From positions 25,234,001 through 25,298,000 of the forward strand of contig CM075985.1 of the NCBI GenBank assembly GCA_038087875.1: a stretch of 64,000 nt of DNA. Direction: 5' to 3'. Origin of the DNA: Malacoraja senta (lineage: Eukaryota). Of the stretch, positions 7,781-63,858 are shown piece after piece. Positions within the stretch are counted from its first letter, which is position 1. The number at the start of each line of letters is the position of its first letter. Position numbers and translations under genes: made by a program. The notes beneath the pieces were generated by a model that was not told where the DNA came from, did no database searches, and was given only the letters and a program-made list of their open reading frames with translations.

Positions 7781-7786
7781 TTTATT
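7781..7786 (-). promoter_or_regulatory. Candidate polyadenylation signal (AATAAA) of the mucin
   Basis: Plus-strand tttatt about 190 nt downstream of the stop codon, in an AT-rich 3' UTR. Confidence 0.55.
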
Positions 7787-7972: not shown

Positions 7973-8141
7973 TCACGGTGCACTACTTTCACAAATAGAG
8001 CACTGACATGTTTTTGCAGAAATATATGAGTACAGTTTACTCAATCCATTTCCACACGCCAATGTTACTTCCTTTATTTCAGTCGTTTGTTCTTCGCAGC
8101 ACTCACAGTTGTGTTTCATTTGATCTATTGTGTAGTCAAAC
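7973..8141 (-). CDS. Mucin last coding exon: second half of the C-terminal cystine knot (CTCK)
   Basis: Acceptor ...cattttAG|G TTT GAC (phase 2). Encodes FDYTIDQMKHNCECCEEQTTEIKEVTLACGNGLSKLYSYISAKTCQCSICESSAP-TGA with CxCC and CxC cystine-knot motifs. Confidence 0.92.
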
Positions 8142-17100: not shown

Positions 17101-20100
17101 AGGAACTCAGTGGGTCAGGCAGCATCTGTGGAGACAAAGGGGTGGTCAACTTGACATTTGCTCCTTTTTTTCGAGAAGAGATCCAGCCACCGGACCAAAG
17201 CGAAGGTGAAGGTGGAAACATAGGGCAAAGGCTTCTGTACATAAACATGTGTATATTGAGTGCATATGTCTTGACAGGCACCTGGATCTTGTCCACACAA
17301 ATGTTTGTCTTAACATTCATGTATCAGGCTTGGTCCCTGTCACTTTGTACCCCCTCCTCCTACCACTGTATCAAAACATTACTCTGTAAGTCCACATGGT
17401 TGCCTGGGATGTATTGGCTATCCCAAGTTAAAATAAGTCACAGATTGACAACTTCCATCCCTCAAGATGATGTTGAGGACCTGGACATTCCCAACAGATA
17501 CAGAACTGGAATACACTTTGCTATCATTGTCCAAGCATTCAGAAACCTGGTACTGGCATCACTGCTCTGCGGGTAGTAGGTACATCACCATAGTCACAGC
17601 CATATAGCATGGAAACAGACCCTTCAACCCAACTGGTCAATGCCAAACAAGATGCTCATCCTGCGCCCAGCAGGTAAATATTTCCCTAAAGCTTTCCTAT
17701 CCATGTACATGTTCAGATGTCTTTTTAATGATGCCATCATACCTGCCTTAGGAACTTCATCTGGCAGCTTTTTCCACCTACCCACTATCCACTCTGTGTT
17801 TCCTCTTAGCTTCATGCACTACATGTGCTAGACTGCCCAACATTTCTCTATTCCAATCATGTACCCAATTAACTAGTTCTCTAATGTTGCAGAGCAGCCT
17901 ACCATGTGGAATAGACTATGTCGATGGCCCTGTCATCATCAAAGTTTTTGGTTACTTCTTCCAAAACCTCAATCAAATTTTTGACACAATTTCCCACACA
18001 CAAAACCACGCTGACTATCCTGAGTCAACCCCACTCTTTCCTAATGCTTGTATATCTTATTCTTCAGAATCGTCTCCAGTAACTTTCCTACCACATATGT
18101 TAAGTTATAGGTCTATTGTTCTCATGTTTTCTATGTAATCCTTCTTCATTAGAGGCAAAATATTATCTACCCTCCAATCTTCCAGCACCCTACCTGTGCC
18201 ATAAGAAACGATTCATATATCTCAGTAAGGACTGCTGCAATTTCTTCCCATAATCTTCATGGATAAACCTGATCAAGCCCAGAGATTTATGTACCTTTTG
18301 GATCAGTACGCTGGAAAATGAATACTGTTTTAATAGGTTAAGCTATGTTATCAAGAATGAGCTTGTCTGTTGGCTCGTGAACTTCTCCTCTGAAACAATC
18401 CTTTGGTAACGTTTGTTTGGCAAGTGAGTAGCATAAACTAACTCCGACTCCTCCTCCTGACAAAATACCTGCAGCACAGAGTTGCCATTACCATGTTTTG
18501 ACAAGAGCCAAACACAAGACCTCATTGCAATATACCTGATCCAGATACTAACACCTATTAGATTAGATAATCATATGCATGAGAGACCACAAGAACGTCT
18601 GCATAACCGTCATTGAGTTCCAATTCAATGAGTGATTTTCAGAGATAATTTTAACGCCTGAGAATCCAGAACCTTCAAAAAGCCAGTTGAACATCATGAG
18701 CCAAATTAGCATTTTGTGCAGAAGAACTCAAAGTTATGTGACATAATTATAATAGTGCAATTTTACTAAATGACTATGTGACACCAGAGTTCATTATTGT
18801 GCATTTAAAAGTTTACTCTGAACTCCAGGTAATAAATCTAGAAAACAATCTAAAATTCAAGATGAGTTTCGACTATCATAATATAAGAACTCCGTAACCT
18901 CATGAGGTTTTGCCCTGATATTTGACCACACAAAATAATTTTACTTAAAGTAAAAGTATCAGAAAATACAAAATAATTTTCATGCACTCACATTTCTGAA
19001 GTTTCCTGAGTAGTCTGTGCATTCTGTAGGAAAGAGAGATGTGGAATGACTAAATTTGTGTTACCTTTTTGAGTTGTAGGAGGGCTTTATCTGAATTATA
19101 GTTTATAATTGTTTTACTGTTTTGTGGAAATATAACATACTAGTACATAAAGGAACACATTGTGTCGCATCAAAGAAAAGAATGCTATGTTCAACCAAGC
19201 AGCCAAGAGGAATTCGTACGCAGTTAGGAAACCTCCAACAGGAATTGATCAGCTGTCACATTTTAATAAATTGTTTTACTGTTGACATTTCCTTCATCGT
19301 AGAATCATGTGGGAGGGTATGCTTGCTGCTACATTTCTTCATTTCTGTCAATCTACAAATGACTATTTTGCTGCCATCTCGAACAATCCTCGAACAAGAG
19401 TGGTACTCTTGACACTTCGATTGTGGATTTCATGAAGAATTTACAAGGCGCTTCTTATTTCAGAAGTTGTTCTCCTATTTTCCGACTGAGAATTATTAAA
19501 TATTTGCGGTAACACCATAAACAGGCAAGAGGGAAATATAGAGCTTCACTTTAACGTTACCTACCATATGTAGTGCTGGTAGTGGGCTCAGTTGATGATG
19601 TTGTTGGCGTTGTTTCTTGAGGAAGAAGATAAAGTTTTATCAACCAATGTAGCTGAGAAGAATTAGTATGAAGTTGAAAAAGCTTCAAAAGGAAATGTTT
19701 AAGCTGGGAAATTGCGTCAGAATGTTTTACCCTGTTATTTTCTTAATTGCAGAATAAAGTTGCAGGGCCTACTAAATTTATACCTCACTCTCTCCTTGTC
19801 AATTCAGCAGCTGAATATTTCAGTGCCATCACAAATAATTACGCTCTCTTTCATAGCAGCACGAATATGTTTTTCAGAAATTGCAGCTGATCAGGCATTT
19901 AGTAAGATTGAGTTGGCACAGTTATGCAGCTGGTAGAGCTTCAGCCTCATAGTGTTAGAGATTTGTATTCTATCTTGACCTTGGGTGCTGTCTATGCTGG
20001 GATTGCACGATCTCCCTTTCACTGCCTGTGCTCCCTCCAAGTTTTTAACAGTGGATTATACTAACCTGGAGTAGTGATGGTGGTGGTCCCAGATGTTGAT

Positions 20101-23100: not shown

Positions 23101-26100
23101 AGTCAGGAAACCATCAGTAGGAATTCATATGCTGGCACACTTTATTAAAATGTTTAACAGATGGCATTTTTGTTCTTCATAGAATAAAATTGTAGGGCAA
23201 AATATACTTTTGATCAATCAGCAGCTGAATATTTCTGTGCCATCACAAATAATCCTGTGCTATCTATACACCAGTTGCGGACTTCCTGGAAGATCAACCG
23301 TCTTCCAAAGACCGCAAGGTCTACTTAATACCATAATTTCTAATAGTATGGAATGTGTGTACTATGGGTAAGCATGTCTGTTCATATGTCCCATTGATAC
23401 ATGATTCTCAACTTGCATAAAATGTGTTCATATTAATCATGGTTTTGTTTTTTGCTACGGAATGTCCGAAGAAATAGAGAAGCAGAAAACACCAACACAT
23501 ATCCTCCACAAATCTGAACTATTTTGAAATTGTGTCATAATTTGGTACAATTGTTATGAGCCAAACATTGACATCTTAACGTGTATATTTGCACAATTTA
23601 TGCCAATAATGTCAGCAAAGATGCAAGAAGTAAGTCACAGAGCTGATGTTAGAAATGTTGTTTCATTGTCTTTGATTTGCCAATGTTTATGGAAAGTGGT
23701 TTGACTCACCTGTTGTGGAACTGGAGGTGGACTCAGTTGTACCAGTTGTCAAAGATGTTGTTGGTGTTGTTCCTTGAGAGCAAATAGAAAAGCATTTACA
23801 AATTGAATTGCAAGAGTCACCAATCAATTTCAGTACGATACTGCACATTTTCCTGAGACTGGGCTGAATTTTAACAATGTTCATTGTTCGTGCCTAAGCA
23901 AAGGACATTTAGAAGTTAACCAAATTTTGCTTCGTCATTTATCAAGGACCGAAATTATGAAAAGACATTGTGATTTTTCAAAGAAAGTTCTGAACTCCTT
24001 TATTGATCCATTTTGGAAAAATCATTGAGCAGAAACAAAACTGTTTAACAGCGTTGCCATGACCAAAAACTCCCGGAATAGTGGAAGAGGCGAAGGGAAG
24101 AGACCTTTTCTATAAAAGTGAAAATCCTTATCCATGTCAACTGAAAAGTGCCAGCCTCAATGCTCTTTTTAAAATTATTTAGGCAACCAGCACCAAAACG
24201 CCACTTTAATATGGTACAGGCTTCTATATTTTCGTGGTGAGAAACTACATTTTTTTAATAATGGAATGAACAAATATTCCTGAAGAGGGTGCTGTGTAGA
24301 ACTTCACTAAACAAAGCACAGTCCCAAAGGAAAAGCTAACAAGATTGATAGATGATGTTACTAACCTGATGTAGTGCTGTTGGTGGTCTCAGTTGTTGGT
24401 GTCGTTTCTAGTGAAAGAAAGAATGCTGTATTCAAGTGGAGCAGCCAAGAGGAATTGGTACACAGTTATAAAGCCATCAACAGCAATTCATGAGCTGGCA
24501 CATTTTATGAAAGTGTTTTAATATGTAGATTTGTTACTTCTTCAGAATATATGCAAAGATAAACTGCTCAGCAACAACAGACTGTGTCCCCCGCGGCCTC
24601 TCCACGGCGTTCAGCGCCCAGCTCGCCTATTTCACCACCTCAACTCGGTGGATCTTCGGTGATGGCCCCGGTCACTTCCCCGGTCACTTCCCCGTCATTT
24701 CACCAGTGAATTGAATAAAGCATGCAGCCATACTATACGGCTGCATTACTTTTTCCTTGTCAATCAGCAGCTGAATATTTCAGGGCCATCATAAACAATT
24801 TCAATTTCTTAATGTACCAACTTCAGATTTTGTGGAAGCTCAGCAAGTATTCTAAGAACTACTGATCAGAAATTTAGAACATAAGGAGCGGTAAAGTGCC
24901 ACAGCTGGTGCAACTCCTACCTCACAGCACCAGAGAAGTCAGATTGATTTGTTCCACAGGTGTTGTGTGCATGGAGATTACATGTACTCCTGTTGTGTGT
25001 GCCTTTCCTACAAGTGTCAGAAATATATTGTCACTAACCTGATGTAGTACTGGTTGTGGTCTCAGTTGTTGATGTAGTTGTTGGTGTTTCTACTGAAAGA
25101 AAATAATGCAATATTCAACCAAGGCAGTCAAGAGGAATTGGTATACACCTAACCATTGGTAGTCAGGAAACCATCAGCAGGAATTCATATGCTGGCACAC
25201 TTTATTAAAATGTTTAACAGATGGCATTTTTGTTCTTCGTAGAATAAAATGGCAGGCCAAATTATATCTGATCAATCAGCAGCTGAATATTTCTGTGCCA
25301 TCACAAATAAACCTGTTCTCTCTATATACCAGTTGCAGATTTCCTGGAAGATCAACCGTCTTCCAAATACCGCAAGGTCTACTTAATACCATATTTTCTA
25401 ATACCATTATTCGTTGATCCATTTTTGAAAAATCTTTGAGCTGAAACAAAACTGTTTAACAGCGTTGCCATGACCAAAAACTCCCGGAATAGTGGATGAG
25501 GCGAAGGGAAGAGACCTTTTCTATAAAAGTGAAAATCCTTATCCATATCACTGTAAGGTGCCAGACTCAATTCACTTTTTAAATTATTATTGCAGGCAAT
25601 CAGCACCAAAAGGCCTCCTTAATTCGGTAGTTGTTTCTATATTTTCTTGGTGAGAAACTACATTTTTGGAATAAAGCAATGAACAAATAGTCCTGAAGAG
25701 GGTGCTATATAGAGCTTCACTAAACAAAGCACAGTCCTAAAGGAAAAGCTAACAAGATTGCTGGATGATGTTACTAACCTGATGTAATGCTGGTGGTGGT
25801 CTCTGTTGTTGGTGTCGTTTCTAGTGAGAAAAAAGAATGCTGTATTCAAGTGGGGCAGCCAAGAGGAATTGGTACGCAGTTATGAAGCCATCAACAGGAA
25901 TTCATGAGCTGGCATATTTTATGAAAACGTTTTACTAGTTGTCACTTTCTTCATCAGTCAATAAAGCATGCGGCCATACTATATGGCTGCATTGATTTTT
26001 CCTCGTCTTTCAGAAATTGCAGCTGATCAGGCATTTAGTAAGATTGAGTTGGCACAGATGTGCAGCTGGTAGAGCTGCAGCCTCATAGTGTTCGAGATTA

Positions 26101-29100
26101 GTATTCTATCCTGACCTTGGTTGCTGTCTATGCTGGGATTGCACGTTCTCCTTTTCACTGCCTGTGATCCCCCAAGTTTTTAACAGAGGATGATACTGAC
26201 CTGATGTTGTGGTGGTCCCAGATGTTGATGTAGTTGTTTCTAGTGAAATAAAAAAAATGTTATGTTCCACTGAGACAAACAAGAGGAATTGTTATGCAGT
26301 TTAGAATCCTTCAACAGGAATTTATCAACTGGCACCTTATAATAAAACATTTTACACTTGATATTTCCTTATCAGTGAATAAAGCGTGCAGCCATACAAT
26401 GCGGCTGCATTACTACTTCCTTGTCAATCAGCAGCTGAATATGTCAGGGCCATCACAAACAATTTCAATTTCTTAATGTACCAACTTCAGATTTTGTGGA
26501 AGCTCAGCAAGTATTCCAAGAACTACTGATCAGACATTTAGAACATAAGGAGCGGTAAAGTGCCACAGCTGGTGCAACTCCTACCTCACAGCACCAGAGA
26601 CTTCAGATTGATTTGTTCCATGGGTGTTGTATGCGTGGAGATTACATGTACTCCCTGTTATGTGTGCCTTTCCTACAAGTGTCAGAAATATATTGTCACT
26701 AACCTGATGTAGTACTGGTTGTGGTCTCAGTTGATGATGTAGTTGTTGGTGTTTCTAGTGAAAGAAAATAATGCAATATTCAACCAAGACAGCCAAGAGG
26801 AATTGGTACACAGCTAACTATTGGTAGTCAGGAAACCATCAGCAGGAATTCATATGCTGGCACACTTCATTAAAATGTTTAACAGATGGTATTTTTGTTC
26901 TTCATAGAATAAAATTGTAGGGCAAAACATACTTTTGATCAATCAGCAGCTGAATATTTCTTTGCCATCACAAATAATCCTGTGCTATCTATACACCAGT
27001 TGCGGATTTCCTGGAAGATCAACCGTCTTCCAAAGACCGCAAGGTCTACTTAATACCATAATTTCTAATAGTATGGAATGTGTGTACTATGGGTAAGCAT
27101 GTCTGTTCATATGTCCCATTGATACATGATTCTCAACTTGCATAAAATGTGTTCATATTAATCATGCTTTTGTTTTTTGCTATGGAATGTCCGAAGAAAT
27201 AGAGAAGCAGAAAACACCAACACATATCCTCCACAAATCTGAACTATTTTGAAATTGTGTCATAATTTGGTACAATTGTTATGAGCCAAACATTGACATC
27301 TTAACGTGTATATTTGCACAATTTATGCCAATAATGTAAGCAAAGATGCAAGAAGTAAGTCACAGAGCTGATGTTAGAAATGTTGTTTCATTGTCTTTAA
27401 TTTGCCAATGTTTATGGAAAGTGGTTTCACTCACCTGTTGTGGAACTGGAGGTGGACTCAGTTGTACCAGTTGTCAAAGATGTTGTTGGTGTTGTTCCTT
27501 GAGAGCAAATAGAAAAGCATTTACAAATTGAATTGCAAGAGTCACCAATCAATTTCAGTACGATACTGCACATTTTCCTGAGACTGGGCTGAATTTTAAC
27601 AATGTTCATTGTTCGTGCCTAAGCAAAGGTCATTTAGAAGTTAACCAAATTTTGCTTCGTCATTTATCAAGGACCGAAATTATGAAAAGACATTGTGATT
27701 TTTCAAAGAAAGTTCTGAACTCCTTTATTGATCCATTTTGGAAAAATCATTGAGCAGAAACAAAACTGTTTAACAGCGTTGCCATGACCAAAAACTCCCG
27801 GAATAGTGGAAGAGGCGAAGGGAAGAGACCTTTTCTATAAAAGTGAAAATCCTTATCCATGTCAACTGAAAAGTGCCAGCCTCAATGCTCTTTTTTAAAT
27901 TATTTAGGCAACCAGCACCAAAAGGCCACCTTAATATGGTAGAGGCTTCTATATTTTCGTGGTGAGAAACTACATTTTTTTAATAAAGGAATGAACAAAT
28001 ATTCCTGAAGAGGGTGCTGTGTAGAACTTCACTAAACAAAGCACAGTCCTAAAGGAAAAGCTAACAAGATTGATAGATGATGTTACTAACCTGATGTAGT
28101 GCTGGTGGTGGTCTCAGTTGTTGGTGTCGTTTCTAGTGAAAGAAAGAATGCTGTATTCAAGTGGAGCAGCCAAGAGGAATTGGTACACAGTTATAAAGCC
28201 ATCAACAGCAATTCATGAACTGGCACATTTTATGAAAGTGTTTTAATATGTAGATTGGTTACTTCTTAAGAATATATGCAAAGATAAACTGCTCAGCAAC
28301 AACAGACTGTGTCCCCCGCGGCCTCTCCACGGCGTTCAGCGCCCAGCTCGCCTATTTCACCACCTCAACTCGGTGGGTCTCCGGTGATGGCCCCGGTCAC
28401 TTCCCCGGTCACTTCCCCGTCATTTCACCAGTGAATTGAATAAAGCATGCTGTAGTGCGTGGGTCTCGGAATTAAGCACGAAGTCGTGTTTTGAGAAGCA
28501 CTTTTTATTAATATCCTCCCAGTTCTAGGGAAGACCAAACGAGAGGAAGATGGCACCCAAAACCCCTGCCTTTAAAGCCTCCGGCTAAGGGCCGCCTCCG
28601 GACTGAACCTCTCCTGTGCCGAGGGGTTCGACACTATGATGGCACGACCCTTGGGAGCCGCCACAGAACCCCCCCCCAAGAACCAGAGGCACGAAACGCA
28701 CCGGCGGGCGAACGACCCGGCCGGCCCGCGTGCGGAAGTTAGCCGCTAGTGGGGCTTGCGGAGGTATAGGTGGAGGGACAGGACGAGGGACCGGCGGTAG
28801 GACAGGTGGAGTGACAGGCGGAGGGAGCCGTGAAGGGGGGCGCCCTCGAGGCCGAGGTTGGGCAACCAGCACCGGCTGGTCAATGTCCAGGTGTGCCGGC
28901 TTCAAACGGTCAATCGACACTGCCTCCGGCCGGCCCCCCATGTCCAGGACAAAAGTCGACTGCCCGTGTTCCAGCACTCGGAACGGGCCCTCGTACGGCC
29001 TCTGGAGTGGCGTCCGGTGGGCATCACGGCGCAGGAAGATGTACGGGCAGTCCCTGAGGGCTGATGGCACGTGTGGGTGAAATGTCCCATGGCGGGACGT

Positions 29101-32100
29101 CGGGACGGGTGCGAGCCTGCCAACTTGCTCGCGAAGGCGCTTTAGGGTGGATGAGGGCGTTCCCTGCTGCCCCGGCGCCGACGGCACGAACTCCCCGGGC
29201 ACCGTGAGTGGCGACCCGTAAACGAGCTCCGCCGATGATGAGGCCAAGTCCTCTTTGGGAGCGGTCCGGATGCCCAGCATCACCCACGGCAACTCGTCCA
29301 TCCAGTCTGGGCCGGAGAGTCGTGCCTTCAGTGCTGCCTTCAGCTGCCGGTGGAATCTCTCCACCAGACCGTTAGCTTGCGGGTGGTAAGCCGTGGTGTG
29401 GTGTAGCCGCACCCCCAGCAAGTGAGCCATGGCTGACCACAGCTCGGAGGTGAACTGTGGCCCCCGGTCTGAGGAGATGTGCGCTGGCACCCCGAAGCGA
29501 GCAATCCAATGCGCGGACAACGCACGAGCACACGTAACCGTTGAAGTATCAGTCAACGGAATGGCCTCCGGCCACCGCGTGAAGCGGTCCACCATTGTCA
29601 GAAGGTGGGTGATGCCCCGGGATGGCGGGAGAGTGCCTACAATGTCTATGTGGAGATGGTCGAACCGCCGGTGAGGTAGACCAAACTCCTGGAGAGGCGC
29701 ACGGACATGGCGCTGGATCTTTGCCGTCTGGCACGGAATGCAGGTGCGAGCCCAATGGCCAACCTGCTTGCGCAGACCGTGCCACATGAAACGAGCGGCC
29801 ACTAGTGCCGTTGTCACCCGGATTGATGGGTGAGACAGTCCGTGGATCACCTCGAACACCCTCCGGCGCCAGGTGGCAGGGACGATGGGGCGCGGCTGAC
29901 CGGACGCCATACAATGCGGCTGCATTACTTTTTCCTTGTCAATCAGCAGCTGAATATTTCAGGGCCATCATAAACAATTTCAATTTCTTAATGTACCAAC
30001 TTCAGATTTTGTGGAAGCTCAGCAAGTATTCTAAGAACTACTGATCAGAAATTTAGAACATAAGGAGCGGTAAAGTGCCACAGCTGGTGCAACTCCTACC
30101 TCACAGCACCAGAGAATTCAGATTGATTTGTTCCACAGGTGTTGTGTGCATGGAGATTACATGTACTCCTGTTGTGTGTGCCTTTCCTACAAGTGTCAGA
30201 AATATATTGTCACTAACCTGATGTAGTACTGGTAGTGGTCTCAGTTGTTGATGTAGTTGTTGGTGTTTCTACTGAAAGAAAAGAATGCAATATTCAACCA
30301 AGGCAGCCAAGAGGAATTGGTATACACCTAACTATTGGTAGTCAGGAAACCATCAGCAGGAATTCATATGCTGGCACACTTTATTAAAATGTTTAACAGA
30401 TGGCATTTTTGTTCTTCGTAGAATAAAATGGCAGGCCAAATTATATCTGATCAATCAGCAGCTGAATATTTCTGTGCCATCACAAATAAACCTGTTCTCT
30501 CCATATACCAGTTGCAGATTTCCTGGAAGATCAACCGTCTTCCAAATACCGCAAGGTCTACTTAATACCATATTTTCTAATACCATTATTCGTTGATCCA
30601 TTTTTGAAAAATCTTTGAGCTGAAACAAAACTGTTTAACAGCGTTGGCATGACCAAAAACTCCCGGAATAGTGGAAGAGGCGAAGGGAAGAGACCTTTTC
30701 TATAAAAGTGAAAATCCTTATCCATATCTACTGTAAGGTGCCAGACTCAATTCACTTTTTAAATTATTATTGCAGGCAATCAGCACCAAAAGGCCTCCTT
30801 AATTCGATAGTTGTTTCTATATTTTCTTGGTGAGAAACTACATTTTTGGAATAAAGCAATGAACAAATATTCCTGAAGAGGGTGCTATATAGAGCTTCAC
30901 TAAACAAAGCACAGTCCTAAAGGAAAAGCTAACAAGATTGATAGATGATGTTACTAACCTGATGTAATGCTGGTGGTGGTCTCTGTTGTTGGTGTCGTTT
31001 CTAGTGAAAAAAAAGAATGCTGTATTCAAGTGGGGCAGCCAAGAGGAATTGGTACGCAGTTATAAAGCCATCAACAGGAATTCATGAGCTGGCATATTTT
31101 ATGAAAACGTTTTACTAGTTGTCACTTTCTTCATCAGTCAATAAAGCATGCGGCCATACTATATGGCTGCATTGATTTTTCCTCGTCTTTCAGAAATTGC
31201 AGCTGATCAGGCATTTAGTAAGATTGAGTTGGCACAGATGTGCAGCTGGTAGAGCTGCAGCCTCATAGTGTTAGAGATTTGTATTCTATCCTGACCTCGG
31301 TTGCTGTCTATGCTGGGATTGCACGTTCTCCTTTTCACTGCCTGTGATGCCCCAAGTTTTTAACAGAGGAATATACTGACCTGATGTTGTGGTGGTCCCA
31401 GATGTTGATGTAGTTGTTTCTAGTGAAATAAAAAAATGTTATGTTCCACTGAGACAAACAAGAGGAATTGTTATGCAGTTTAGAATCCTTCAACAGGAAT
31501 TTATCAACTGGCACCTTTTAATAAAACATTTATACACTTGATATTTCCTTATCAGTGAATAAAGCGTGCGGCCATACAATGCGGCTGCATTACTTTTTCC
31601 TTGTCAATCAGCAGCTGAATATGTCAGGGCCATCACAAACAATTTCAATTTCTTAATGTACCAACTTCAGATTTTGTGGAAGCTCAGCAAATATTCCAAG
31701 AACTACTGATCAGAAATTTAGAACATAAGCAGCGGTAAAGTGCCACAGCTGGTGCAACACCTACGTCACAGCACCAGAGACTTCAGATTGATTTGTTCCA
31801 TGGGTGTTGTGTGCATGGAGATTACATGTACTCCCTGTTATGTGTGTATTTCCTACAAGTGTCCGAAATATATTGTCACTAACCTGATGTAGTACTGGTC
31901 GTGGTCTCAGTTGATGATGTAGTTGTTGGTGTTTCTAGTGAAAGAAAATAATGCAATATTCAACCAAGACAGCCAAGAGGAATTGGTATACAGCTAACTA
32001 TTGGTAGTCAGGAAACCATCAGCAGGAATTCTATGCTGGCACACTTTATTAAAATATTTAACAGATGGCATTTTTGGTCTTCATAGAATAAAATTGTTGG

Positions 32101-35100
32101 GCAAAACATACTTTTGATCAATCAGCAGCTGAATATTTCTGTGCCATCACAAATAATCCTGTGCTATCTATACACCAGTTGCGGATTTCCTGGAAGATCA
32201 ATCGTCTTCCAAAGACCGCAAGGTCTACTTAATACCATAATTTCTAATAGTATGGAATGTGTGTACTATGGGTAAGCATGTCTGTTCATATGTCCCATTG
32301 ATACATGATTCTCAACTTGCATAAAATGTGTTCATATTAATCATGGTTTTGTTTTTTGCTACGGAATGTCCGAAGAAATAGAGAAGCAGAAAACACCAAC
32401 ACATATCCTCCACAAATCTGAACTATTTTGAAATTGTGTCATAATTTGGTACAATTGTTATGAGCCAAACATTGACATCTTAACGTGTATATTTGCACAA
32501 TTTATGCCAATAATGTAAGCAAAGATGCAAGAAGTAAGTCACAGAGCTGATGTTAGAAATGTTGTTTCATTGTCTTTGATTTGCCAATGTTTATGGAAAG
32601 TGGTTTCACTCACCTGTTGTGGAACTGGAGGTGGACTCAGTTGTACCAGTTGTCAAAGATGTTGTTGGTGTTGTTCCTTGAGAGCAAATAGAAAAGCATT
32701 TACAAATTGAATTGCAAGAGTCACCAATCAATTTTAGTACGATACTGCACATTTTCCTGAGACTGGGCTGAATTTTAACAATGTTCATTGTTCGTGCCTA
32801 AGCAAAGGACATTTAGAAGTTAACCAAATTTTGCTTCGTCATTTATCAAGGACCGAAATGATGAAAAGACATTGTGATTTTTCAAAGAAAGTTCTGAACT
32901 CCTTTATTGATCCATTTTGGAAAAATCATTGAGCAGAAACAAAACTGTTTAACAGCGTTGCCATGACCAAAAACTCCCGGAATAGTGGAAGAGGCAAAGG
33001 GAAGAGACCTTTTCTATAAAAGTGAAAATCCTTATCCATGTCAACTGAAAAGTGCCAGCCTCAATGCTCTTTTTAAAATTATTTAGGCAACCTGCACCAA
33101 AACGCCACTTTAATATGGTAGAGGCTTCTATATTTTCGTGGTGAGAAACTACATTTTTTGAATAAAGGAATGAACAAATATTCCTGAAGAGGGTGCTGAG
33201 TAGAACTTCACTAAACAAAGCACAGTCCTAAAGGAAAAGCTAACAAGATTGATAGATGATGTTACTAACCTGATGTGGTGCTGGTGGTGGTCTCAGTTGT
33301 TGGTGTCGTTTCTAGTGAAAAAAAAGAATGCTGTATTCAAGTGGGGCAGCCAAGAGGAATTGGTACGCAGTTATAAAGCCATCAACAGCAATTCATGAGC
33401 TGGCACATTTTATGAAAGTGTTTTAATATGTAGATTGGTTACTTCTTAATAATATATGCAAAGATAAACTGCTCAGCAACAACAGACTGTGTCCCCCGCG
33501 GCCTCTCCACGGCGTTCAGCGCCCAGCTCGCCTATTTCACCACCTCAACTCGGTGGGTCTCCGGTGATGGCCCCGGTCACTTCCCCGGTCACTTCCCTGT
33601 CATTTCACCAGTGAATTGAATAAAGCATGTGGCCATACTATATGGCTGCATTACTTTTTCCTTGTCAATCAGCAGCTGAATATTTCAGGGCCATCATAAA
33701 CAATTTCAATTTCTTAATGTACCAACTTCAGATTTTGTGGAAGCTCAGCAAGTATTCTAAGAACTACTGATCAGAAATTTAGAACATAAGGAGCGGTAAA
33801 GTGCCACAGCTGGTGCAACTCCTACCTCACAGCACCAGAGAATTCAGATTGATTTGTTCCACAGGTGTTGTGTGCATGGAGATTACATGTACTCCTGTTG
33901 TGTGTGCCTTTCCTACAAGTGTCTGAAATATATTGTCACTAACCTGATGTAGTACTGGTTGTGGTCTCAGTTGTTGATGTAGTTGTTGGTGTTTCTACTG
34001 AAAGAAAATAATGCAATATTCAACCAAGGCAGCCAAGAGGAATTGGTATACACCTAACCATTGGTAGTCAGGAAACCATCAGCAGGAATTCATATGCTGG
34101 CACACTTTATTAACATGTTTAACAGATGGCATTTTTGTTCTTCGTAGAATAAAATGGCAGGCCAAATTATATCTGATCAATCAGCAGCTGAATATTTCTG
34201 TGCCATCACAAATAAACCTGTTCTCTCTATATACCAGTTGCAGATTTCCTGGAAGATCAACCGTCTTCCAAATACCGCAAGGTCTACTTGATACCATATT
34301 TTCTAATACCATTATTCGTTGATCCATTTTTGAAAAATCTTTGAGCTGAAACAAAACTGTTTAACAGCGTTGCCATGACCAAAAACTCCCGGAATAGTGG
34401 AAGAGGCGAAGGGAAGAGACCTTTTCTATAAAAGTGAAAATCCTTATCCATATCTACTGTAAGGTGCCAGACTCAATTCACTTTTTAAATTATTATTGCA
34501 GGCAATCAGCACCAAAAGGCCTCCTTAATTCGGTAGTTGTTTCTATATTTTCTTGGTGAGAAACTACATTTTTGGAATAAAGCAATGAACAAATTTTCCT
34601 GAAGAGGGTGCTATATAGAGCTTCACTAAACAAAGCACAGTCCTAAAGGAAAAGCTAACAAGATTGATAGATGATGTTACTAACCTGATGTAATGCTGGT
34701 GGTGGTCTCTGTTGTTGGTGTCGTTTCTAGTGAAAAAAAAGAATGCTGTATTCAAGTGGGGCAGCCAAGAGGAATTGGTACGCAGTTATAAAGCCATCAA
34801 CAGGAATTCATGAGCTGGCATATTTTATGAAAACGTTTTACTAGTTGTCACTTTCTTCATCAGTCAATAAAGCATGCGGCCATACTATATGACTGCATTG
34901 ATTTTTCCTCGTCTTTCAGAAATTGCAGCTGATCAGGCATTTAGTAAGATTGAGTTGGCACAGATGTGCAGCCGGTAGAGCTGCAGCCTCATAGTGTTAG
35001 AGATTAGTATTCTATCCTGACCTCGGTTTCTGTCTATGCTGGGATTGCACGTTCTCCTTTTCACTGCCTGTGATCCCCCAAGTTTTTAACAGAGGATGAT

Positions 35101-38100
35101 ACTGACCTGATGTTGTGGTGGTCCCAGATGTTGATGTAGTTGTTTCTAGTGAAATAAAAAAAATGTTATGTTCCACTGAGACAAACAAGAGGAATTGTTA
35201 TGCAGTTTAGAATCCTTCAACAGGAATTTATCAACTGGCACCTTTTAATAAAACATTTTACACTTGATATTTCCTTATCAGTGAATAAAGCGTGCGGCCA
35301 TACTATGCGGCTGCATTACTACTTCCTTGTCAATCAGCAGCTGTATATGTCAGGGCCATCACAAACAATTTCAATTTCTTAATGTACCAACTTCAGATTT
35401 TGTGGAAGCTCAGCAAGTATTCCAAGAACTACTGATCAGAAATTTAGAACATAAGGAGCGGTAAAGTGCCACAGCTGGTGCAACTCCTACCTCACAGCAC
35501 CAGAGACTTCAGATTGATGTGTTCCATGGGTGTTGTGTTCATGGAGATTACATGTACTCCCTGTTATGTGTCCCTTTCCTACAAGTGTCTTAAATATATT
35601 GTCACTAACCTGATGTAGTACTGGTAGTGGTCTCAGTTGTTGATGTAGTTGTTGGTGTTTCTAGTGAAAGAAAATAATGCAATATTCAACCAAGACAGCC
35701 AAGAGAAATTGGTATACAGCTAACTATTGGTAGTCAGGAAACCATCAGTAGGAATTCATATGCTGGCACACTTTATTAAAATGTTTAACAGATGGCATTT
35801 TTGTTCTTCATAGAATAAAATTGTAGGGCAAAATATACTTTTGATCAATCAGCAGCTGAATATTTCTGTGCCATCACAAATAATCCTGTTCTATCTGTCA
35901 CCAGTTGCAGATTTCCTGGAAGATAAACCGTCTTCCAAAGACCGCAAGGTCTACTTAATACCATAATTTCTAATAGTATGGAATGTGTGTACTATGGGTA
36001 AGCATGTCTGTTCATATGTCCCATTGATACATGATTCTCAACTTGCATAAAATGTGTTCATATTAATCATGGTTTTGTAGTTTGCTACGGAATGTCCGAA
36101 GAAATTGAGAAGCAGAAAACACCAACTCACATCCTCCACAAATCTGAACTATTTTGAAATTGTGCCATAATTTGGTAAAACTGTTATGTCAAACATTGAC
36201 AGCTTAACATGTATATTTGCACAATTTATGCCAATAATGTAAGCAAAGATGCAAGAAGTTAGCCACAGAGCTGATGTTAGAAATGTGTTTCATTGTCTTT
36301 GATTTGCCAATGTTTATGGAAAGTGGTTTGACTCACCTGTTGTGGAACTGGAGGTGGACTCAGTTGTACCAGTTGTCAAAGATGTTGTTGGTGTTGTTCC
36401 TTGAGAGCAAATAGAAAAGCATTTACAAATTGAATTGCAAGAGTCACCAATCAATTTCAGTACGATACTGCACATTTTCCTGAGACTGGGCTGAATTTTA
36501 ACAATGTTCATTGTTCGTGCCTAAGCAAAGGACATTTAGAAGTTAACCAAATTTTGCTTCGTCATTTATCAAGGACCGAAATTATGAAAAGACATTGTGA
36601 TTTTTCAAAGAAAGTTCTGAACTCCTTTATTGATCCATTTTGGAAAAATCATTGAGCAGAAACAAAACTGTTTAACTGCGTTGCCATGACCAAAAACTCC
36701 CGGAAAATTGGAAGAGGCAAAGGGAAGAGACCTTTTCTAAAAAAGTGAAAATCCTTATCCATGTCAACTGAAAAGTGCCAGCCTCAATGCTGTTTTTAAA
36801 ATTATTGTAGGCAGCCAGCATCTAAAGGCCTCCTTAATTTGGTAGTAGCTTCTATATTTTCGTGTTGACAAACTACATTTTTGAATAAAGCAATGAACAA
36901 ATGTTCCTGAAGAGGGTGCTATATAGAGCTTCACTAAACAAAGCACAGTCCTAAAGGAAAAGCTAACAAGATTGATAGATGATGTTACTAACCTGATGTA
37001 GTGCTGGTGGTGGTCTCAGTTGTTGGTGTCGTTTCTAGTGAAAGAAAATATTGCTGTATTCAAGTGGGACAGTCAAGAGGAATTGGTACACAGTTATAAA
37101 GCCATCAACAGGAATTCATGAGCTGGCACATTTTATGAAAGTGTTTTAATATATAGATTGGTTACTTCTTACTAATATAAGCGAAGATAAACTGCTCAGC
37201 AACAACAGACTGTGTCCCCCGCGGCCTCTCCACTGTGTTCAGCGCCCAGCTCGCCTATTTCACCACCTCAACTCGGTGGGTCTCCGGTGCTGTCCCCGGT
37301 CACTTCCCCGTCACTTCACCGGTGAATTGAATAAAGCATGCGGCCATACTATACGGCTGCATTACTTTTTCCTTGTCAATCAGCAGCTGAATATTTCAGG
37401 GCCATCATAAACAATTTCAATTTCTTAATGTACCAACTTCAGATTTTGTGGAAGCTCAGCAAGTATTCTAAGAACTACTGATCAGAAATTTAGAACATAA
37501 GGAGCGGTAAAGTGCCACAGCTGGTGCAACTCCTACCTCGCAGCACCAGAGAATTCAGATTGATTTGTTCCACAGGTGTTGTGTGCATGGAGGTTACATG
37601 TACTCCTGTTGTGTGTGCCTTTCCTACAAGTGTCTGAAATATATTGTCACTAACCTGATGTAGTACTGGTTGTGGTCTCAGTTGTTGATGTAGTTGTTGG
37701 TGTTTCTACTGAAAGAAAATAATGCAATATTCAACCAAGGCAGCCAAGAGGAATTGGTATACACCTAACTATTGGTAGTCAGGAAACCATCAGCAGGAAT
37801 TCATATGCTGGCACACTTTATTGAAATGTTTAACAGATGGCATTTTTGTTCTTCGTAGAATAAAATGGCAGGCCAAATTATATCTGATCAATCAGCAGCT
37901 GAATATTTCTGTGCCATCACAAATAAACCTGTTCTCTCTATATACCAGTTGCAGATTTCCTGGAAGATCAACCGTCTTCCAAATACTGCAAGGTCTACTT
38001 AATACCATATTTTCTAATACCATTATTCGTTGATCCATTTTTGAAAAATCTTTGAGCTGAAACAAAACTGTTTAACAGCGTTGCCATGACCAAAAACTCC

Positions 38101-56100: not shown

Positions 56101-59100
56101 TGTAGTTTGCTACGGAATGTCCGAAGAAATTGAGAAGCAGAAAACACCAACTCACATCCTCCACAAATCTGAACTATTTTGAAATTGTGCCATAATTTGG
56201 TAAAACTGTTATGTCAAACATTGACAGCTTAACATGTATATTTGCACAATTTATGCCAATAATGTAAGCAAAGATGCAAGAAGTTAGCCACAGAGCTGAT
56301 GTTAGAAATGTGTTTCATTGTCTTTGATTTGCCAATGTTTATGGAAAGTGGTTTGACTCACCTGTTGTGGAACTGGAGGTGGACTCAGTTGTACCAGTTG
56401 TCAAAGATGTTGTTGGTGTTGTTCCTTGAGAGCAAATAGAAAAGCATTTACAAATTGAATTGCAAGAGTCACCAATCAATTTCAGTACGATACTGCACAT
56501 TTTCCTGAGACTGGGCTGAATTTTAACAATGTTCATTGTTCGTGCCTAAGCAAAGGACATTTAGAAGTTAACCAAATTTTGCTTCGTCATTTATCAAGGA
56601 CCGAAATTATGAAAAGACATTGTGATTTTTCAAAGAAAGTTCTGAACTCCTTTATTGATCCATTTTGGAAAAATCATTGAGCAGAAACAAAACTGTTTAA
56701 CTGCGTTGCCATGACCAAAAACTCCCGGAAAATTGGAAGAGGCAAAGGGAAGAGACCTTTTCTAAAAAAGTGAAAATCCTTATCCATGTCAACTGAAAAG
56801 TGCCAGCCTCAATGCTGTTTTTAAAATTATTGTAGGCAGCCAGCATCTAAAGGCCTCCTTAATTTGGTAGTAGCTTCTATATTTTCGTGTTGACAAACTA
56901 CATTTTTGAATAAAGCAATGAACAAATGTTCCTGAAGAGGGTGCTATATAGAGCTTCACTAAACAAAGCACAGTCCTAAAGGAAAAGCTAACAAGATTGA
57001 TAGATGATGTTACTAACCTGATGTAGTGCTGGTGGTGGTCTCAGTTGTTGGTGTCGTTTCTAGTGAAAGAAAATATTGCTGTATTCAAGTGGGACAGTCA
57101 AGAGGAATTGGTACACAGTTATAAAGCCATCAACAGGAATTCATGAGCTGGCACATTTTATGAAAGTGTTTTAATATATAGATTGGTTACTTCTTACTAA
57201 TATAAGCGAAGATAAACTGCTCAGCAACAACAGACTGTGTCCCCCGCGGCCTCTCCACTGTGTTCAGCGCCCAGCTCGCCTATTTCACCACCTCAACTCG
57301 GTGGGTCTCCGGTGCTGTCCCCGGTCACTTCCCCGTCACTTCACCGGTGAATTGAATAAAGCATGCGGCCATACTATACGGCTGCATTACTTTTTCCTTG
57401 TCAATCAGCAGCTGAATATTTCAGGGCCATCATAAACAATTTCAATTTCTTAATGTACCAACTTCAGATTTTGTGGAAGCTCAGCAAGTATTCTAAGAAC
57501 TACTGATCAGAAATTTAGAACATAAGGAGCGGTAAAGTGCCACAGCTGGTGCAACTCCTACCTCGCAGCACCAGAGAATTCAGATTGATTTGTTCCACAG
57601 GTGTTGTGTGCATGGAGGTTACATGTACTCCTGTTGTGTGTGCCTTTCCTACAAGTGTCTGAAATATATTGTCACTAACCTGATGTAGTACTGGTTGTGG
57701 TCTCAGTTGTTGATGTAGTTGTTGGTGTTTCTACTGAAAGAAAATAATGCAATATTCAACCAAGGCAGCCAAGAGGAATTGGTATACACCTAACTATTGG
57801 TAGTCAGGAAACCATCAGCAGGAATTCATATGCTGGCACACTTTATTGAAATGTTTAACAGATGGCATTTTTGTTCTTCGTAGAATAAAATGGCAGGCCA
57901 AATTATATCTGATCAATCAGCAGCTGAATATTTCTGTGCCATCACAAATAAACCTGTTCTCTCTATATACCAGTTGCAGATTTCCTGGAAGATCAACCGT
58001 CTTCCAAATACTGCAAGGTCTACTTAATACCATATTTTCTAATACCATTATTCGTTGATCCATTTTTGAAAAATCTTTGAGCTGAAACAAAACTGTTTAA
58101 CAGCGTTGCCATGACCAAAAACTCCCGGAATAGTGGAAGAGGCGAAGGGAAGAGACCTTTTCTATAAAAGTGAAATCCTTATCCATGTCTACTGAAAGGT
58201 GCCAGACTCAATTCACTTTTTAAATTATTATTGCAGGCAATCAGCACCAAAAGGCCTCCTTAATTCGGTAGTTGTTTCTATATTTTCTTGGTGAGAAACT
58301 ACATTTTTGGAATAAAGCAATGAACAAATATTCCTGAAGAGGGTGCTATATAGAGCTTAACTAAACAAAGCACAGTCCTAAAGGAAAAGCTAACAAGATT
58401 GATAGATGATGTTACTAACCTGATGTAATGCTGGTGGTGGTCTCTGTTGTTGGTGTCGTTTCCAGTGAAAAAAAAGAATGCTGTATTCAAGTGGGGCAGC
58501 CAAGAGGAATTGGTACGCAGTTATAAAGCCATCAACAGGAATTCATGAGCTGGCATATTTTATGAAAACGTTTTACTAGTTGTCACTTTCTTCATCAGTC
58601 AATAAAGCATGCGGCCATACTATATGGTGCATTGATTTTTCCTCGTCTTTCAGAAATTGCAGCTGATCAGGCATTTAGTAAGATTGAGTTGGCACAGATG
58701 TGCAGCTGGTAGAGCTGCAGCCTCATAGTGTTAGAGATTTGTATTCTATCCTGACCTCGGTTGCTGTCTATGCTGGGATTGCACGTTCTCCTTTTCACTG
58801 CCTGTGATCCCCCAAGTTTTTAACAGAGGATGATACTGACCTGATGTTGTGGTGGTCCCAGATGTTGATGTAGTTGTTTCTAGTGAAATAAAAAAATGTT
58901 ATGTTCCACTGAGACAAACAAGAGGAATTGTTATGCAGTTTAGAATCCTTCAACAGGAATTTATCAACTGGCACCTTTTAATAAAACATTTTACACTTGA
59001 TATTTCCTTATCAGTGAATAAAGCGTGCGGCCATACAATGCGGCTACATTAATTTTTCCTTGTCAATCAGCAGCTGAATATGTCAGGGCCATCACAAACA

Positions 59101-63858: not shown

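What the first reader, a model, noticed from the sequence alone, without database searches (positions are those of the whole stretch)
19565..63858. Mucin PTS domain built from about 68 freely skippable micro-exons: a potential combinatorial splicing cassette
Seen: the 44-kb array hides Thr/Ser-coding micro-exons of 39, 42, 45, 51 and 63 nt, each with a pyrimidine tract-AG and a GT(T/C/G/A)AG donor. Every exon checked is a multiple of 3, phase 1-1, ends in G and begins AA or GA. The junction codon is therefore always GAA (Glu) or GGA (Gly), and any subset of exons splices in frame onto the VWC-CTCK tail. Extrapolating from the unit gives ~68 exons, ~3.3 kb CDS (~1090 aa), ~7% of the DNA. Known: the MUC2/MUC5AC/MUC5B PTS regions in mammals sit mainly in one large exon, while multi-exon PTS regions occur in MUC19 and in Xenopus integumentary mucins, where alternative splicing gives polydispersity, so the design has precedent. 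Inference: this locus could tune mucin length and O-glycan load by exon skipping. I do not know of a description in cartilaginous fish.
Basis: partly seen in the sequence, partly recalled or inferred. Interest (0 to 1): 0.9.

Follow-up and report, generated by a model that had tools for sequence, protein, structure and literature searches.

The report
Skate mucin core built from micro-exons
The 44-kb repeat is the expressed sugar-carrying core of a skate mucus protein, encoded by 66 tiny exons that are spliced as predicted; this design is already known from frog and chicken mucins, and nothing shows the exons being mixed and matched.

Summary
Observation confirmed. On the minus strand, 19565-63858 holds 66 intact Thr/Ser-rich micro-exons (39, 42, 45, 51 and 63 nt; 3,192 nt; 7.2% of the DNA). 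Two further copies have the acceptor AG mutated to GG. All 66 are phase 1-1, start AA or GA and end in G. Spliced to five tail exons (18992-19023 to 7973-8141) they give one 1,220-codon open frame with 70/70 GT-AG introns.

RNA contigs from three runs, apparently of related species, cover only the exons and join them exactly at the predicted ends. NCBI's little-skate model XP_055509561.1 ('integumentary mucin C.1-like') lies in a collinear locus, 91-93% identical, and uses the same exons and tail. A bamboo-shark relative has the same phase-1 AA/GA...G exon design, so it is old in elasmobranchs.

The combinatorial-splicing reading is not supported. Every junction seen joins exons that are genomic neighbours. 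Exon order differs between the two skate loci, and the 20-kb higher-order copies are 99.5-100% identical. Length change therefore looks DNA-level (block duplication); splicing-level tuning remains possible but untested.

The cystine knot is confirmed; the 'VWC' call is not (no Pfam hit, no significant fold match).

Precedent exists: chicken Muc13 (Lang 2006, with the same splicing hypothesis) and Xenopus FIM mucins. First readers of this scan flagged similar arrays elsewhere in this genome. Verdict: new member of a known kind.

The parts
19565..63858 (-). Micro-exon PTS array: 66 intact and 2 acceptor-dead Thr/Ser-rich exons in 3.72-kb units. It runs off the window's high end, which is the upstream part of the gene.
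23773..43806 (-). One 20.03-kb higher-order repeat made of five units (about 30 exons). The next copy, 43807-63858, is 99.5-100% identical unit for unit.
27435..27497 (-). Exon type A, 63 nt. It starts GA, has an AAG acceptor and a GTGAGT donor (12 copies).
   Evidence: RNA joints at 27435 in X1, X2 and X3
26704..26754 (-). Exon type B, 51 nt, with a GTTAGT donor.
   Evidence: joints 23029|23710 and 22514|22979 for the sister copy
26201..26239 (-). Exon type C, 39 nt, with a GTCAGT donor.
   Evidence: joints at 22514 and 22476 for the sister copy
25779..25820 (-). Exon type D, 42 nt.
   Evidence: joint 22093|22476 (X3)
25039..25089 (-). Exon type E, 51 nt, with a tandem cag|tag (NAGNAG) acceptor that would also allow a 54-nt form.
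   Evidence: joints 24407|25039 and 25089|27435; a 54-nt form is seen in X2 at 23032
24366..24407 (-). Exon type D', 42 nt.
   Evidence: joint 24407|25039 (X1)
58420..58461 (-). D-type exon copy with the acceptor AG mutated to GG (cactgg). It is probably not spliced in, and the frame survives its loss.
38395..38436 (-). The same acceptor-dead D copy in the other higher-order repeat.
19565..19615 (-). Last PTS exon, 51 nt, with a GTAGGT donor. It follows the degenerate terminal exons 21402-21443, 20744-20806 and 20066-20110.
   Evidence: aligned to the skate model
18992..19023 (-). 32-nt adaptor exon (ECTDYSGNFRN). It shifts the phase from 1 to 0 and begins the Cys-rich VWC-like module.
14559..14669 (-). 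Tail exon, 111 nt: the middle of the VWC-like Cys-rich module.
   Evidence: no Pfam hit
10110..10161 (-). Tail exon, 52 nt: the end of the VWC-like module (CCYYC).
9376..9481 (-). Cystine-knot exon 1, 106 nt.
   Evidence: (Cys_knot/DAN partial hits)
7973..8141 (-). Cystine-knot exon 2 with the stop codon (7973-7975). An AATAAA signal lies at 7781-7786.
   Evidence: (MUC2 7qcu E=1e-5; VWF, Norrin)
28451..29905 (-). Intronic 1.46-kb GC-rich insert with an intact 446-aa integrase ORF (28585-29925; rve + H2C2): an LTR-retroelement fragment. A 100% identical copy sits about 20,032 bp higher (ORF at 48617-49957).
11844..13156 (-). Intronic reverse-transcriptase (RVT_1) remnant beside the N gap at 11564-11706.

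Best explanation
The region is the 3' part of a very large, expressed, secreted mucin gene of a skate, read on the minus strand.

Its O-glycosylated Thr/Ser core is not one big exon. It is a tandem array of exon-plus-intron modules. Six paralogous micro-exons of 39-63 nt form a 3.72-kb unit that encodes a 96-aa acidic repeat. Five units form a 20-kb higher-order repeat.

The exons are spliced in genomic order onto a short Cys-rich module and a C-terminal cystine knot. The cystine knot is the dimerisation domain of VWF-type gel-forming mucins.

Every exon is phase 1-1 with a G|AA or G|GA junction, a layout shared with a shark relative and therefore inherited from an ancestral exon. Because of this, the gene tolerates gain, loss and reshuffling of modules.

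The evidence points to DNA-level change as the main way length varies: unequal crossing-over or duplication of 3.7-kb and 20-kb blocks, module reshuffling between species, and exon death by splice-site mutation. Inclusion of all competent exons is the default.

Shown: the exons, their splicing, the frame, the cystine knot, the homology, the recent block duplication and the different exon order in a second skate locus.

Inferred: secretion and polymerisation, O-glycosylation, constitutive inclusion and copy-number polymorphism.
For: - Anatomy: 66 symmetric exons form one 1,220-codon ORF with 70/70 GT-AG introns.
- Transcription: RNA runs X3 and X2 cover only the exon bins (X3 depth up to 4,787, intron-only bins 0). 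Joints fall exactly at predicted exon ends and are CT..AC on the plus strand (C->D 22093|22476, B->C 22514|22979, A->B 23029|27435, E->D' 24407|25039). One 221-nt X1 contig reads A-B-C-D'.
- Annotation: XP_055509561.1 from Leucoraja erinacea uses eight consecutive micro-exons plus the same tail. Its locus L001 is collinear with the window at 91-93% identity, introns included.
- Cystine knot: Pfam gives 32.3 bits against a cut-off of 24 for the skate model. The window's last exon hits the MUC2 structure 7qcu at E=1e-5. The predicted fold matches the VWF CTCK structure 4nt5 (E=2e-6, TM 0.65).
- Age of the design: the Chiloscyllium relative has 57-63-nt phase-1 exons that start AA/GA and end in G.
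- DNA-level dynamics: units are 97-98% identical and higher-order copies 99.5-100% identical. An intronic integrase insert was copied with 1341/1341 identity. Exon order differs between the window (regular A-B-C-D-E-D') and L001 (irregular). Two exon copies are killed by AG->GG without breaking the frame.
- Mild constraint: 3.8% of exon columns are variable against 7.6% of intron columns (Fisher p=0.017; for the counts, for the test).
Against: - The RNA evidence comes from assembled contigs of runs labelled as other organisms (A, B and one unnamed). Contigs drop rare isoforms, so constitutive inclusion is not proven.
- No RNA run of the window's own species was found.
- The N-terminal part of the gene lies outside the window, so secretion and polymerisation are inferred from the tail alone.
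- Between the window and the skate locus, tail dN/dS is about 1.1 (24 non-synonymous against 5 synonymous changes), and exons are no better conserved than introns (92.8% against 93.5%). Constraint on non-Cys residues is therefore weak.
- Near-perfect higher-order copies could partly reflect assembly error in a long repeat.
Confidence: 0.75

Rival explanations
1. The symmetric micro-exons are used as a combinatorial cassette. Regulated or stochastic exon skipping gives a polydisperse set of mucin mRNAs and tunes length and O-glycan load within one animal. Comparable cases are Xenopus FIM-C.1 and, by analogy, titin PEVK exons.
For: - Any subset of exons stays in frame.
- The exons are very short. 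Five of the six exon types have a pyrimidine at donor +3 (GTTAGT, GTCAGT), and type A has an AAG acceptor. These are sub-optimal sites by general knowledge.
- E exons carry NAGNAG acceptors, and X2 holds a 54-nt form.
- Two acceptor-dead copies show that the gene tolerates missing exons.
- There is published precedent for splicing-based polymorphism in FIM-C.1, and the hypothesis was published for chicken Muc13.
Against: - No joint in four runs requires skipping. All joints match genomic neighbour pairs once near-identical exon types are allowed for.
- The NCBI skate model includes every consecutive exon, even one with a GC donor.
- Phase symmetry is fully explained by descent from one ancestral exon, and a shark relative shares it.
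- Skipping a whole unit would not be visible in repeats.
Confidence: 0.2
2. The exons are real, but the size and regularity of the array in this window are partly an assembly artefact. The true gene would hold fewer or differently ordered units, with the 99.5-100% identical 20-kb copies being mis-duplicated.
For: - Units u3/u8, u4/u9 and u5/u10 are 99.9-100% identical over 3.7-5.2 kb.
- The integrase insert is 1341/1341 identical between copies.
- The window contains an N gap.
Against: - u2/u7 differ (99.5%) and u1/u6 differ more (97.6%), which is what real, recent duplication would give.
- The independent Leucoraja assembly also shows a long array running upstream of the gene model.
- First-reader notes report that the array continues for about 60 kb beyond the window (unchecked).
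Confidence: 0.08
3. The array is a non-coding macrosatellite or a decaying pseudogene, and its exon-like pieces are chance or relics.
For: - Tail dN/dS is about 1.1 and exons are no better conserved than introns between the two skate loci.
- Two exon copies have dead acceptors.
Against: - Exon-only RNA coverage is high, with exact splice joints.
- There is no stop in 1,220 codons and all 70 introns are GT-AG.
- All Cys residues of the tail are conserved across six elasmobranch proteins.
- The plus-strand and off-array controls are empty.
Confidence: 0.02

Closest known systems
XP_055509561.1 'integumentary mucin C.1-like', Leucoraja erinacea (NCBI automatic model; locus CM054028.1:13.32-13.35 Mb)
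   Same: - It has the same micro-exon types (A, B, C, D'), the same 32-nt adaptor exon and the same Cys-rich module plus cystine knot.
- It is 80% identical over 273 aa.
- Its locus is collinear with the window at 91-93% nucleotide identity, introns included.
   Different: - The model is truncated. It starts inside the array and the array continues upstream of it.
- Exon order is irregular there (A-B-A-C-D'-A-C'-last) against the regular six-exon unit here.
- I could not decide whether it is the orthologue in another skate or a paralogue.
Xenopus laevis integumentary mucins FIM-C.1, FIM-B.1 and FIM-A.1
   Same: - They are secreted skin mucins with short Thr-rich repeats.
- FIM-B.1 was published as homologous with von Willebrand factor (reference title in PMC7177656).
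- FIM-C.1 is described as highly polymorphic through alternative splicing (PMC7177656).
- NCBI names the skate and sawshark relatives after them.
   Different: - FIM-A.1 and FIM-C.1 carry TFF modules (PMC7177656). By my own knowledge, FIM-B.1 carries sushi repeats. Neither is seen in this window.
- Alternative splicing is not shown here.
- Orthology was not tested.
Chicken Muc13 multi-exon PTS domain (Lang, Hansson & Samuelsson 2006, PMC1552070)
   Same: One PTS repeat corresponds to one exon, and the exons are nearly identical. The authors explicitly proposed that splicing could regulate PTS length.
   Different: Muc13 is a transmembrane SEA-domain mucin with at least 12 repeats. The gene here is a cystine-knot, secreted-type mucin with 66 exons in the window and six interleaved exon types in a higher-order repeat.
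MUC6/MUC19-type gel-forming mucins (no fourth VWD after the PTS; Lang et al. 2016, PMC4948705)
   Same: The PTS runs straight into the C-terminal Cys-rich tail with a cystine knot, with no VWD-C8-TIL in between.
   Different: - The closest tail homologues include proteins that do have VWD-C8 before the same tail: Mobula 'mucin-2-like' and a Narcine model.
- The tail therefore does not place the gene in MUC19.
- The N-terminal domains and synteny lie outside the window.
Mammalian mucin VNTRs held in one large exon (MUC2, MUC5AC, MUC5B and others)
   Same: A tandemly repeated Thr/Ser-rich O-glycosylation domain whose length changes by repeat copy number.
   Different: Here the repeat unit contains introns (93% of the unit is intron), so the VNTR is a 3.7-kb or 20-kb macrosatellite of exons rather than an intra-exonic minisatellite.
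Titin PEVK exons (analogy only, from my own knowledge)
   Same: Many short, phase-symmetric, near-identical exons encode a low-complexity extensible segment.
   Different: Differential skipping of PEVK exons is documented. Here it is not. The proteins are unrelated.

Membership tests
Secreted VWF-type (gel-forming) mucin | Long Pro/Thr/Ser-rich (PTS) domain | tested here: met
   The conceptual PTS of 1,067 aa is T 59%, S 19.5%, P 5%, E 10%.
Secreted VWF-type (gel-forming) mucin | C-terminal cystine-knot (CTCK) domain | tested here: met
   Pfam Cys_knot scores 23 bits on the last exon alone and 32.3 bits (cut-off 24) on the 88%-identical skate model. The last exon hits MUC2 7qcu at E=1e-5. The predicted fold matches VWF CTCK 4nt5 (E=2e-6, TMt 0.65).
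Secreted VWF-type (gel-forming) mucin | N-terminal VWD-C8-TIL assemblies (D1-D2-D3) and a signal peptide | not testable with these tools
   The 5' part of the gene lies beyond the window's high end.
Secreted VWF-type (gel-forming) mucin | VWC domain before the cystine knot | tested here: inconclusive
   There is no PF00093 hit even at E<=10. The model of the 66-aa module has pLDDT 67, and its best PDB matches are not significant (FnI and collagen-IIA VWC at E about 1.4-2.7). The Cys pattern ends in CCxxC as in VWF C domains, and it is conserved in six elasmobranch proteins.
MUC19 / MUC6 type (no D4) | No VWD-C8-TIL between the PTS and the C-terminal tail | tested here: met
   The last PTS exon joins in frame through a 32-nt exon to the Cys-rich module. 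The skate model shows the same. The introns were not searched exhaustively for hidden VWD exons.
MUC19 / MUC6 type (no D4) | Phylogenetic placement of the N-terminal D domains, and conserved synteny | not testable with these tools
   Both lie outside the window. The nearest tail homologues are a mix of proteins with and without D4.
Multi-exon PTS mucins (chicken Muc13 / Xenopus FIM design) | Each PTS repeat is encoded by its own short exon, and the exons are near-identical paralogues | tested here: met
   Six exon types recur 11-12 times each. Spliced contigs confirm them.
Multi-exon PTS mucins (chicken Muc13 / Xenopus FIM design) | Transcript length polydispersity through alternative use of repeat exons | tested here: inconclusive
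   No skipping joint was found in contigs of X1, X2 and X3, and none in the NCBI model. Contigs cannot show rare isoforms, and skipping of whole units cannot be seen in a repeat.
Xenopus FIM-C.1 orthologue | TFF (P-domain) modules between the Thr-rich repeats | tested here: not met
   The 1,220-aa conceptual product has no Cys-rich module before the tail (PTS Cys 0.1%). Pfam finds only Cys_knot in the skate model. The upstream part of the gene was not seen.

The most novel reading that the evidence does not exclude
Elasmobranchs may run a PEVK-like system for mucus. Tissue- or condition-specific skipping among about 170 phase-symmetric micro-exons of this gene, and of several paralogous arrays nearby, would set mucin length and glycan load within one animal. 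The weak +3-pyrimidine donors and NAGNAG acceptors would act as the tunable elements.
Probability: 0.15. Interest if true: 0.75.

Novelty: new member of a known kind. Interest (0 to 1): 0.42.

Why it matters
Mucin cores are usually described as VNTRs inside one giant exon. Here a cystine-knot mucin has its whole visible core, at least 1,064 aa, split into 66 micro-exons. A 3.7-kb intron-bearing unit is the evolving repeat, and a distant shark relative shares the same phase-1 G|AA / G|GA junction.

This bears on three things:
- Annotation. Gene finders truncate such genes: the NCBI skate model keeps 8 exons of an array that continues upstream.
- Mucin evolution. The multi-exon design may be ancestral, as Lang et al. 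suggested for Muc13.
- A clean test system. It could show whether mucin length is tuned by copy number or by splicing.

It does not open a new category, because both the design and the splicing hypothesis are already in print.

Tried and rejected
- Tandem Repeats Finder at score >=200 found nothing because the period exceeds 500. A k-mer offset histogram gave the 3.72-kb and 20.03-kb periods instead.
- The sequencing-run searches mostly returned DNA runs. X4, X5, X6 and X10 cover the introns, so they gave no splicing information. No RNA run labelled with the window's own organism was found.
- The X1 joint 19615->22052 looked like a three-exon skip. I rejected it: the contig has 5 mismatches in 43 nt and the proper E exon lay outside the laid stretch. 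With E included, the same kind of contig sits on the normal D/D'-E junction.
- The X2 A->C joint looked like skipping of B. I rejected it as evidence because A->C is a genomic adjacency at 20744->20110 and in Leucoraja L001 (11544->12046).
- Pfam VWC did not hit the typed 69-aa module. The second structure model and its PDB fold search were non-significant.
- Rfam found nothing in one 10-kb stretch of the array.
- The search for homologous proteins with the skate tail returned only the query, because of the length window.
- I did not search with the low-complexity 96-aa repeat as typed letters, so transcript-derived PTS fragments in the protein collection were not mined.
Full report
**What is in the sequence.** The window has a 3.72-kb periodicity nested in a 20.03-kb periodicity from about 19.5 kb to its end (k-mer offsets; composition). 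Reading 19.3-23.6 kb shows that the Thr/Ser-coding pieces lie on the minus strand. An example is ...ctcaag|AAACAACG...CATATG|gtaggt at 19615-19565.

A loose scan and a strict scan give 66 exons between 19565 and 63858. Twenty-two are 51 nt, twenty 42 nt, twelve 63 nt, eleven 39 nt and one 45 nt. All are multiples of three, all are open in the phase-1 frame, all start AA (54) or GA (12) and all end in G. Donors are GTTAGT, GTCAGT, GTGAGT or GTAGGT, and the acceptors are pyrimidine-rich.

The controls are clean. The same filter finds nothing on the minus strand outside the array. On the plus strand it finds only eleven copies of one GC-rich intronic motif.

Two further D-type copies (58420-58461 and 38395-38436) are intact except that the acceptor AG is GG.

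**Unit structure.** One unit is A(63)-B(51)-C(39)-D(42)-E(51)-D'(42) = 288 nt = 96 aa, with introns of 350-690 nt. Units are 97-98% identical to each other. Units one higher-order period apart are 99.5-100% identical.

One unit in five carries a 1.46-kb GC-rich insert in the E-D' intron. The insert has an intact 446-aa integrase ORF (rve + H2C2), and its two copies are identical at 1341/1341 positions. The 20-kb block was therefore duplicated after that insertion, very recently.

Among non-redundant units, 3.8% of exon columns vary against 7.6% of intron columns (Fisher p=0.017; for the counts, for the test). This is a mild sign of constraint.

**The tail.** Downstream, at lower coordinates, a 32-nt exon (18992-19023) takes the frame from phase 1 to phase 0. 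Exons of 111, 52, 106 and 169 nt follow, ending in a stop at 7973-7975 with AATAAA about 190 nt further on. Joined to the 66 exons this gives one ORF of 1,220 codons and 70/70 GT-AG introns. The core is T 59%, S 19.5%, E 10%, P 5%.

The last two exons are a cystine knot:
- Pfam Cys_knot gives partial hits on each exon.
- The last exon matches the MUC2 structure 7qcu at E=1e-5, and also VWF and Norrin.
- The predicted fold of the 88%-identical skate tail matches the VWF CTCK crystal structure (E=2e-6, TM 0.65-0.71).

The module before it has eight conserved Cys and ends in CCxxC, but it does not hit Pfam VWC. Its separate model gave no significant fold match. I therefore call it VWC-like only.

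**Is it transcribed and spliced?** Yes. Of the runs that hold the terminal exon, X4, X5, X6 and X10 are DNA, because they cover the introns. X3 and X2 cover only the exon bins: X3 depth reaches 4,787 while intron-only bins are 0. X1 holds a 221-nt contig that reads A-B-C-D'.

The joints fall on the predicted exon ends to the base and are CT..AC on the plus strand, which is GT..AG on the minus strand: 22093|22476, 22514|22979, 23029|23710 (or 23029|27435), 24407|25039 and 25089|27435. These runs are labelled as other organisms than the DNA runs that match the window best, so this is evidence from close relatives. It is not from the window's own species.

**Relatives.** An exhaustive HMMER search with the last exon found, at 89% identity, XP_055509561.1 'integumentary mucin C.1-like' of the little skate Leucoraja erinacea. 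Its 305 aa are eight micro-exons of the same types followed by the same adaptor exon and tail. It is 80% identical to my conceptual product over 273 aa, with no gap at any predicted junction.

Its locus (L001) is collinear with the window at 91-93% identity, including introns and the 3' flank. The micro-exon array continues upstream of the model's start, so the model is truncated. The model uses every consecutive exon, including one with a GC donor.

Exon order in L001 is irregular (...A-B-A-C-D'-A-C'-last), unlike the regular unit here. Modules have therefore been reshuffled at the DNA level between the two loci.

More distant tails of the same kind occur in Mobula and Narcine models that carry VWD and/or C8 domains ahead of the same tail, in a sawshark 'FIM-B.1-like' protein (CysD + PTS + the same tail), and in Chiloscyllium. 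In the Chiloscyllium locus L002 the PTS is likewise split into 57-63-nt exons that start AA/GA, end in G and are phase 1-1. The junction design therefore predates the skate-shark split.

**Combinatorial splicing?** The arithmetic is right: any subset stays in frame. I found no observation that needs skipping.

B and E, and D and D', are near-identical, so contigs are placed on whichever copy fits best. Read that way, every joint is a neighbour pair.

The apparent three-exon skip disappeared when the E exon was included in the laid stretch. The A->C joint in X2 corresponds to genomic A->C adjacencies at 20744->20110 and in L001.

One X2 contig carries a 54-nt form of a B/E exon, consistent with use of the upstream AG of a cag|tag acceptor. 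That is a 3-nt wobble, not cassette use.

Contigs suppress rare isoforms, and skipping of a whole unit cannot be seen in a repeat. The model is therefore untested rather than refuted.

What the data do show is DNA-level plasticity: near-perfect 20-kb copies, different exon order in the second skate locus, and two splice-dead exon copies that leave the frame intact.

**Selection.** Between the window and L001 the tail has 24 non-synonymous and 5 synonymous differences (dN/dS about 1.1). Exons are as diverged as introns (92.8% against 93.5%). Even so, all Cys residues are conserved across six elasmobranch proteins. The gene is expressed and intact, but apart from its cysteines and its Thr/Ser composition it evolves almost freely.

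**Comparison with what is known.**
- Lang et al. [quoted passage not shown] - Xenopus FIM-C.1 is described as highly polymorphic through alternative splicing (PMC7177656).
- Lang et al. 2016 list Muc2, Muc5, Muc6 and three Muc19 paralogues in the ghost shark, without exon-level description (PMC4948705).
- I found no paper on micro-exon mucins in skates or sharks in the held library.
- Automatic annotation already contains such exons.

First-reader notes of this scan report several similar arrays in the same genome and say this array continues for about 60 kb beyond the window. I could not check them.

**Verdict.** The mechanism that gave the finding its high score is unsupported. This is a large, well-preserved new example of a known design, a multi-exon PTS in a cystine-knot mucin. 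It has a notable macrosatellite organisation, and its length most likely evolves by block duplication.

Noticed in passing
window 28451-29905 and about 48483-49937 (ORFs 28585-29925 and 48617-49957, minus strand): An intact 446-aa integrase ORF (rve + Integrase_H2C2) sits in a 1.46-kb GC-rich insert inside the E-D' intron of every fifth unit. The two copies are 1341/1341 identical, which dates the 20-kb duplication to after the insertion.
   Followed up: partly
window 58420-58461 and 38395-38436 (minus strand): Two D-type exons have their acceptor AG mutated to GG. An upstream acag acceptor would give a 61-nt, frame-breaking exon. Which choice the spliceosome makes is a ready-made test of skipping.
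   Followed up: partly
window E-type exons, e.g. 25039-25089 (acceptor cag|tag); X2 joint at 23032: The E exons have a NAGNAG tandem acceptor. One RNA contig in X2 carries a 54-nt form of a B/E exon, which would add one codon (Val-Glu instead of Glu).
   Followed up: partly
window 7973-19023 compared with L001: Tail dN/dS is about 1.1 (24 non-synonymous, 5 synonymous changes) between this gene and the little-skate model, with every cysteine conserved. Exons are no better conserved than introns (92.8% against 93.5%).
   Followed up: yes
L001 about 13059-13121: A Leucoraja A-type micro-exon has a GC donor (ACAG|GCGAGT) and is still included in the NCBI model.
   Followed up: no
window 11844-13156 (minus strand), beside the N gap 11564-11706: A reverse-transcriptase remnant (RVT_1, E=2e-13) lies in the 4.4-kb intron between the two VWC-like exons.
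   Followed up: partly
window 22333-22531 and 21537-21735 (and the same places in every unit): Intronic pieces reach very high word depth in the DNA runs (up to 16,622 and 4,085 in X4). They are a SINE-like element and a GC-rich repeat that are high-copy genome-wide. Rfam found no family there.
   Followed up: partly
L002 2001-4550 (Chiloscyllium punctatum BEZZ01001905.1): The bamboo-shark relative has PTS exons of 57-63 nt, phase 1-1, starting AA/GA and ending in G. Further unannotated candidates lie at 1335-1391 and 2824-2868.
   Followed up: partly
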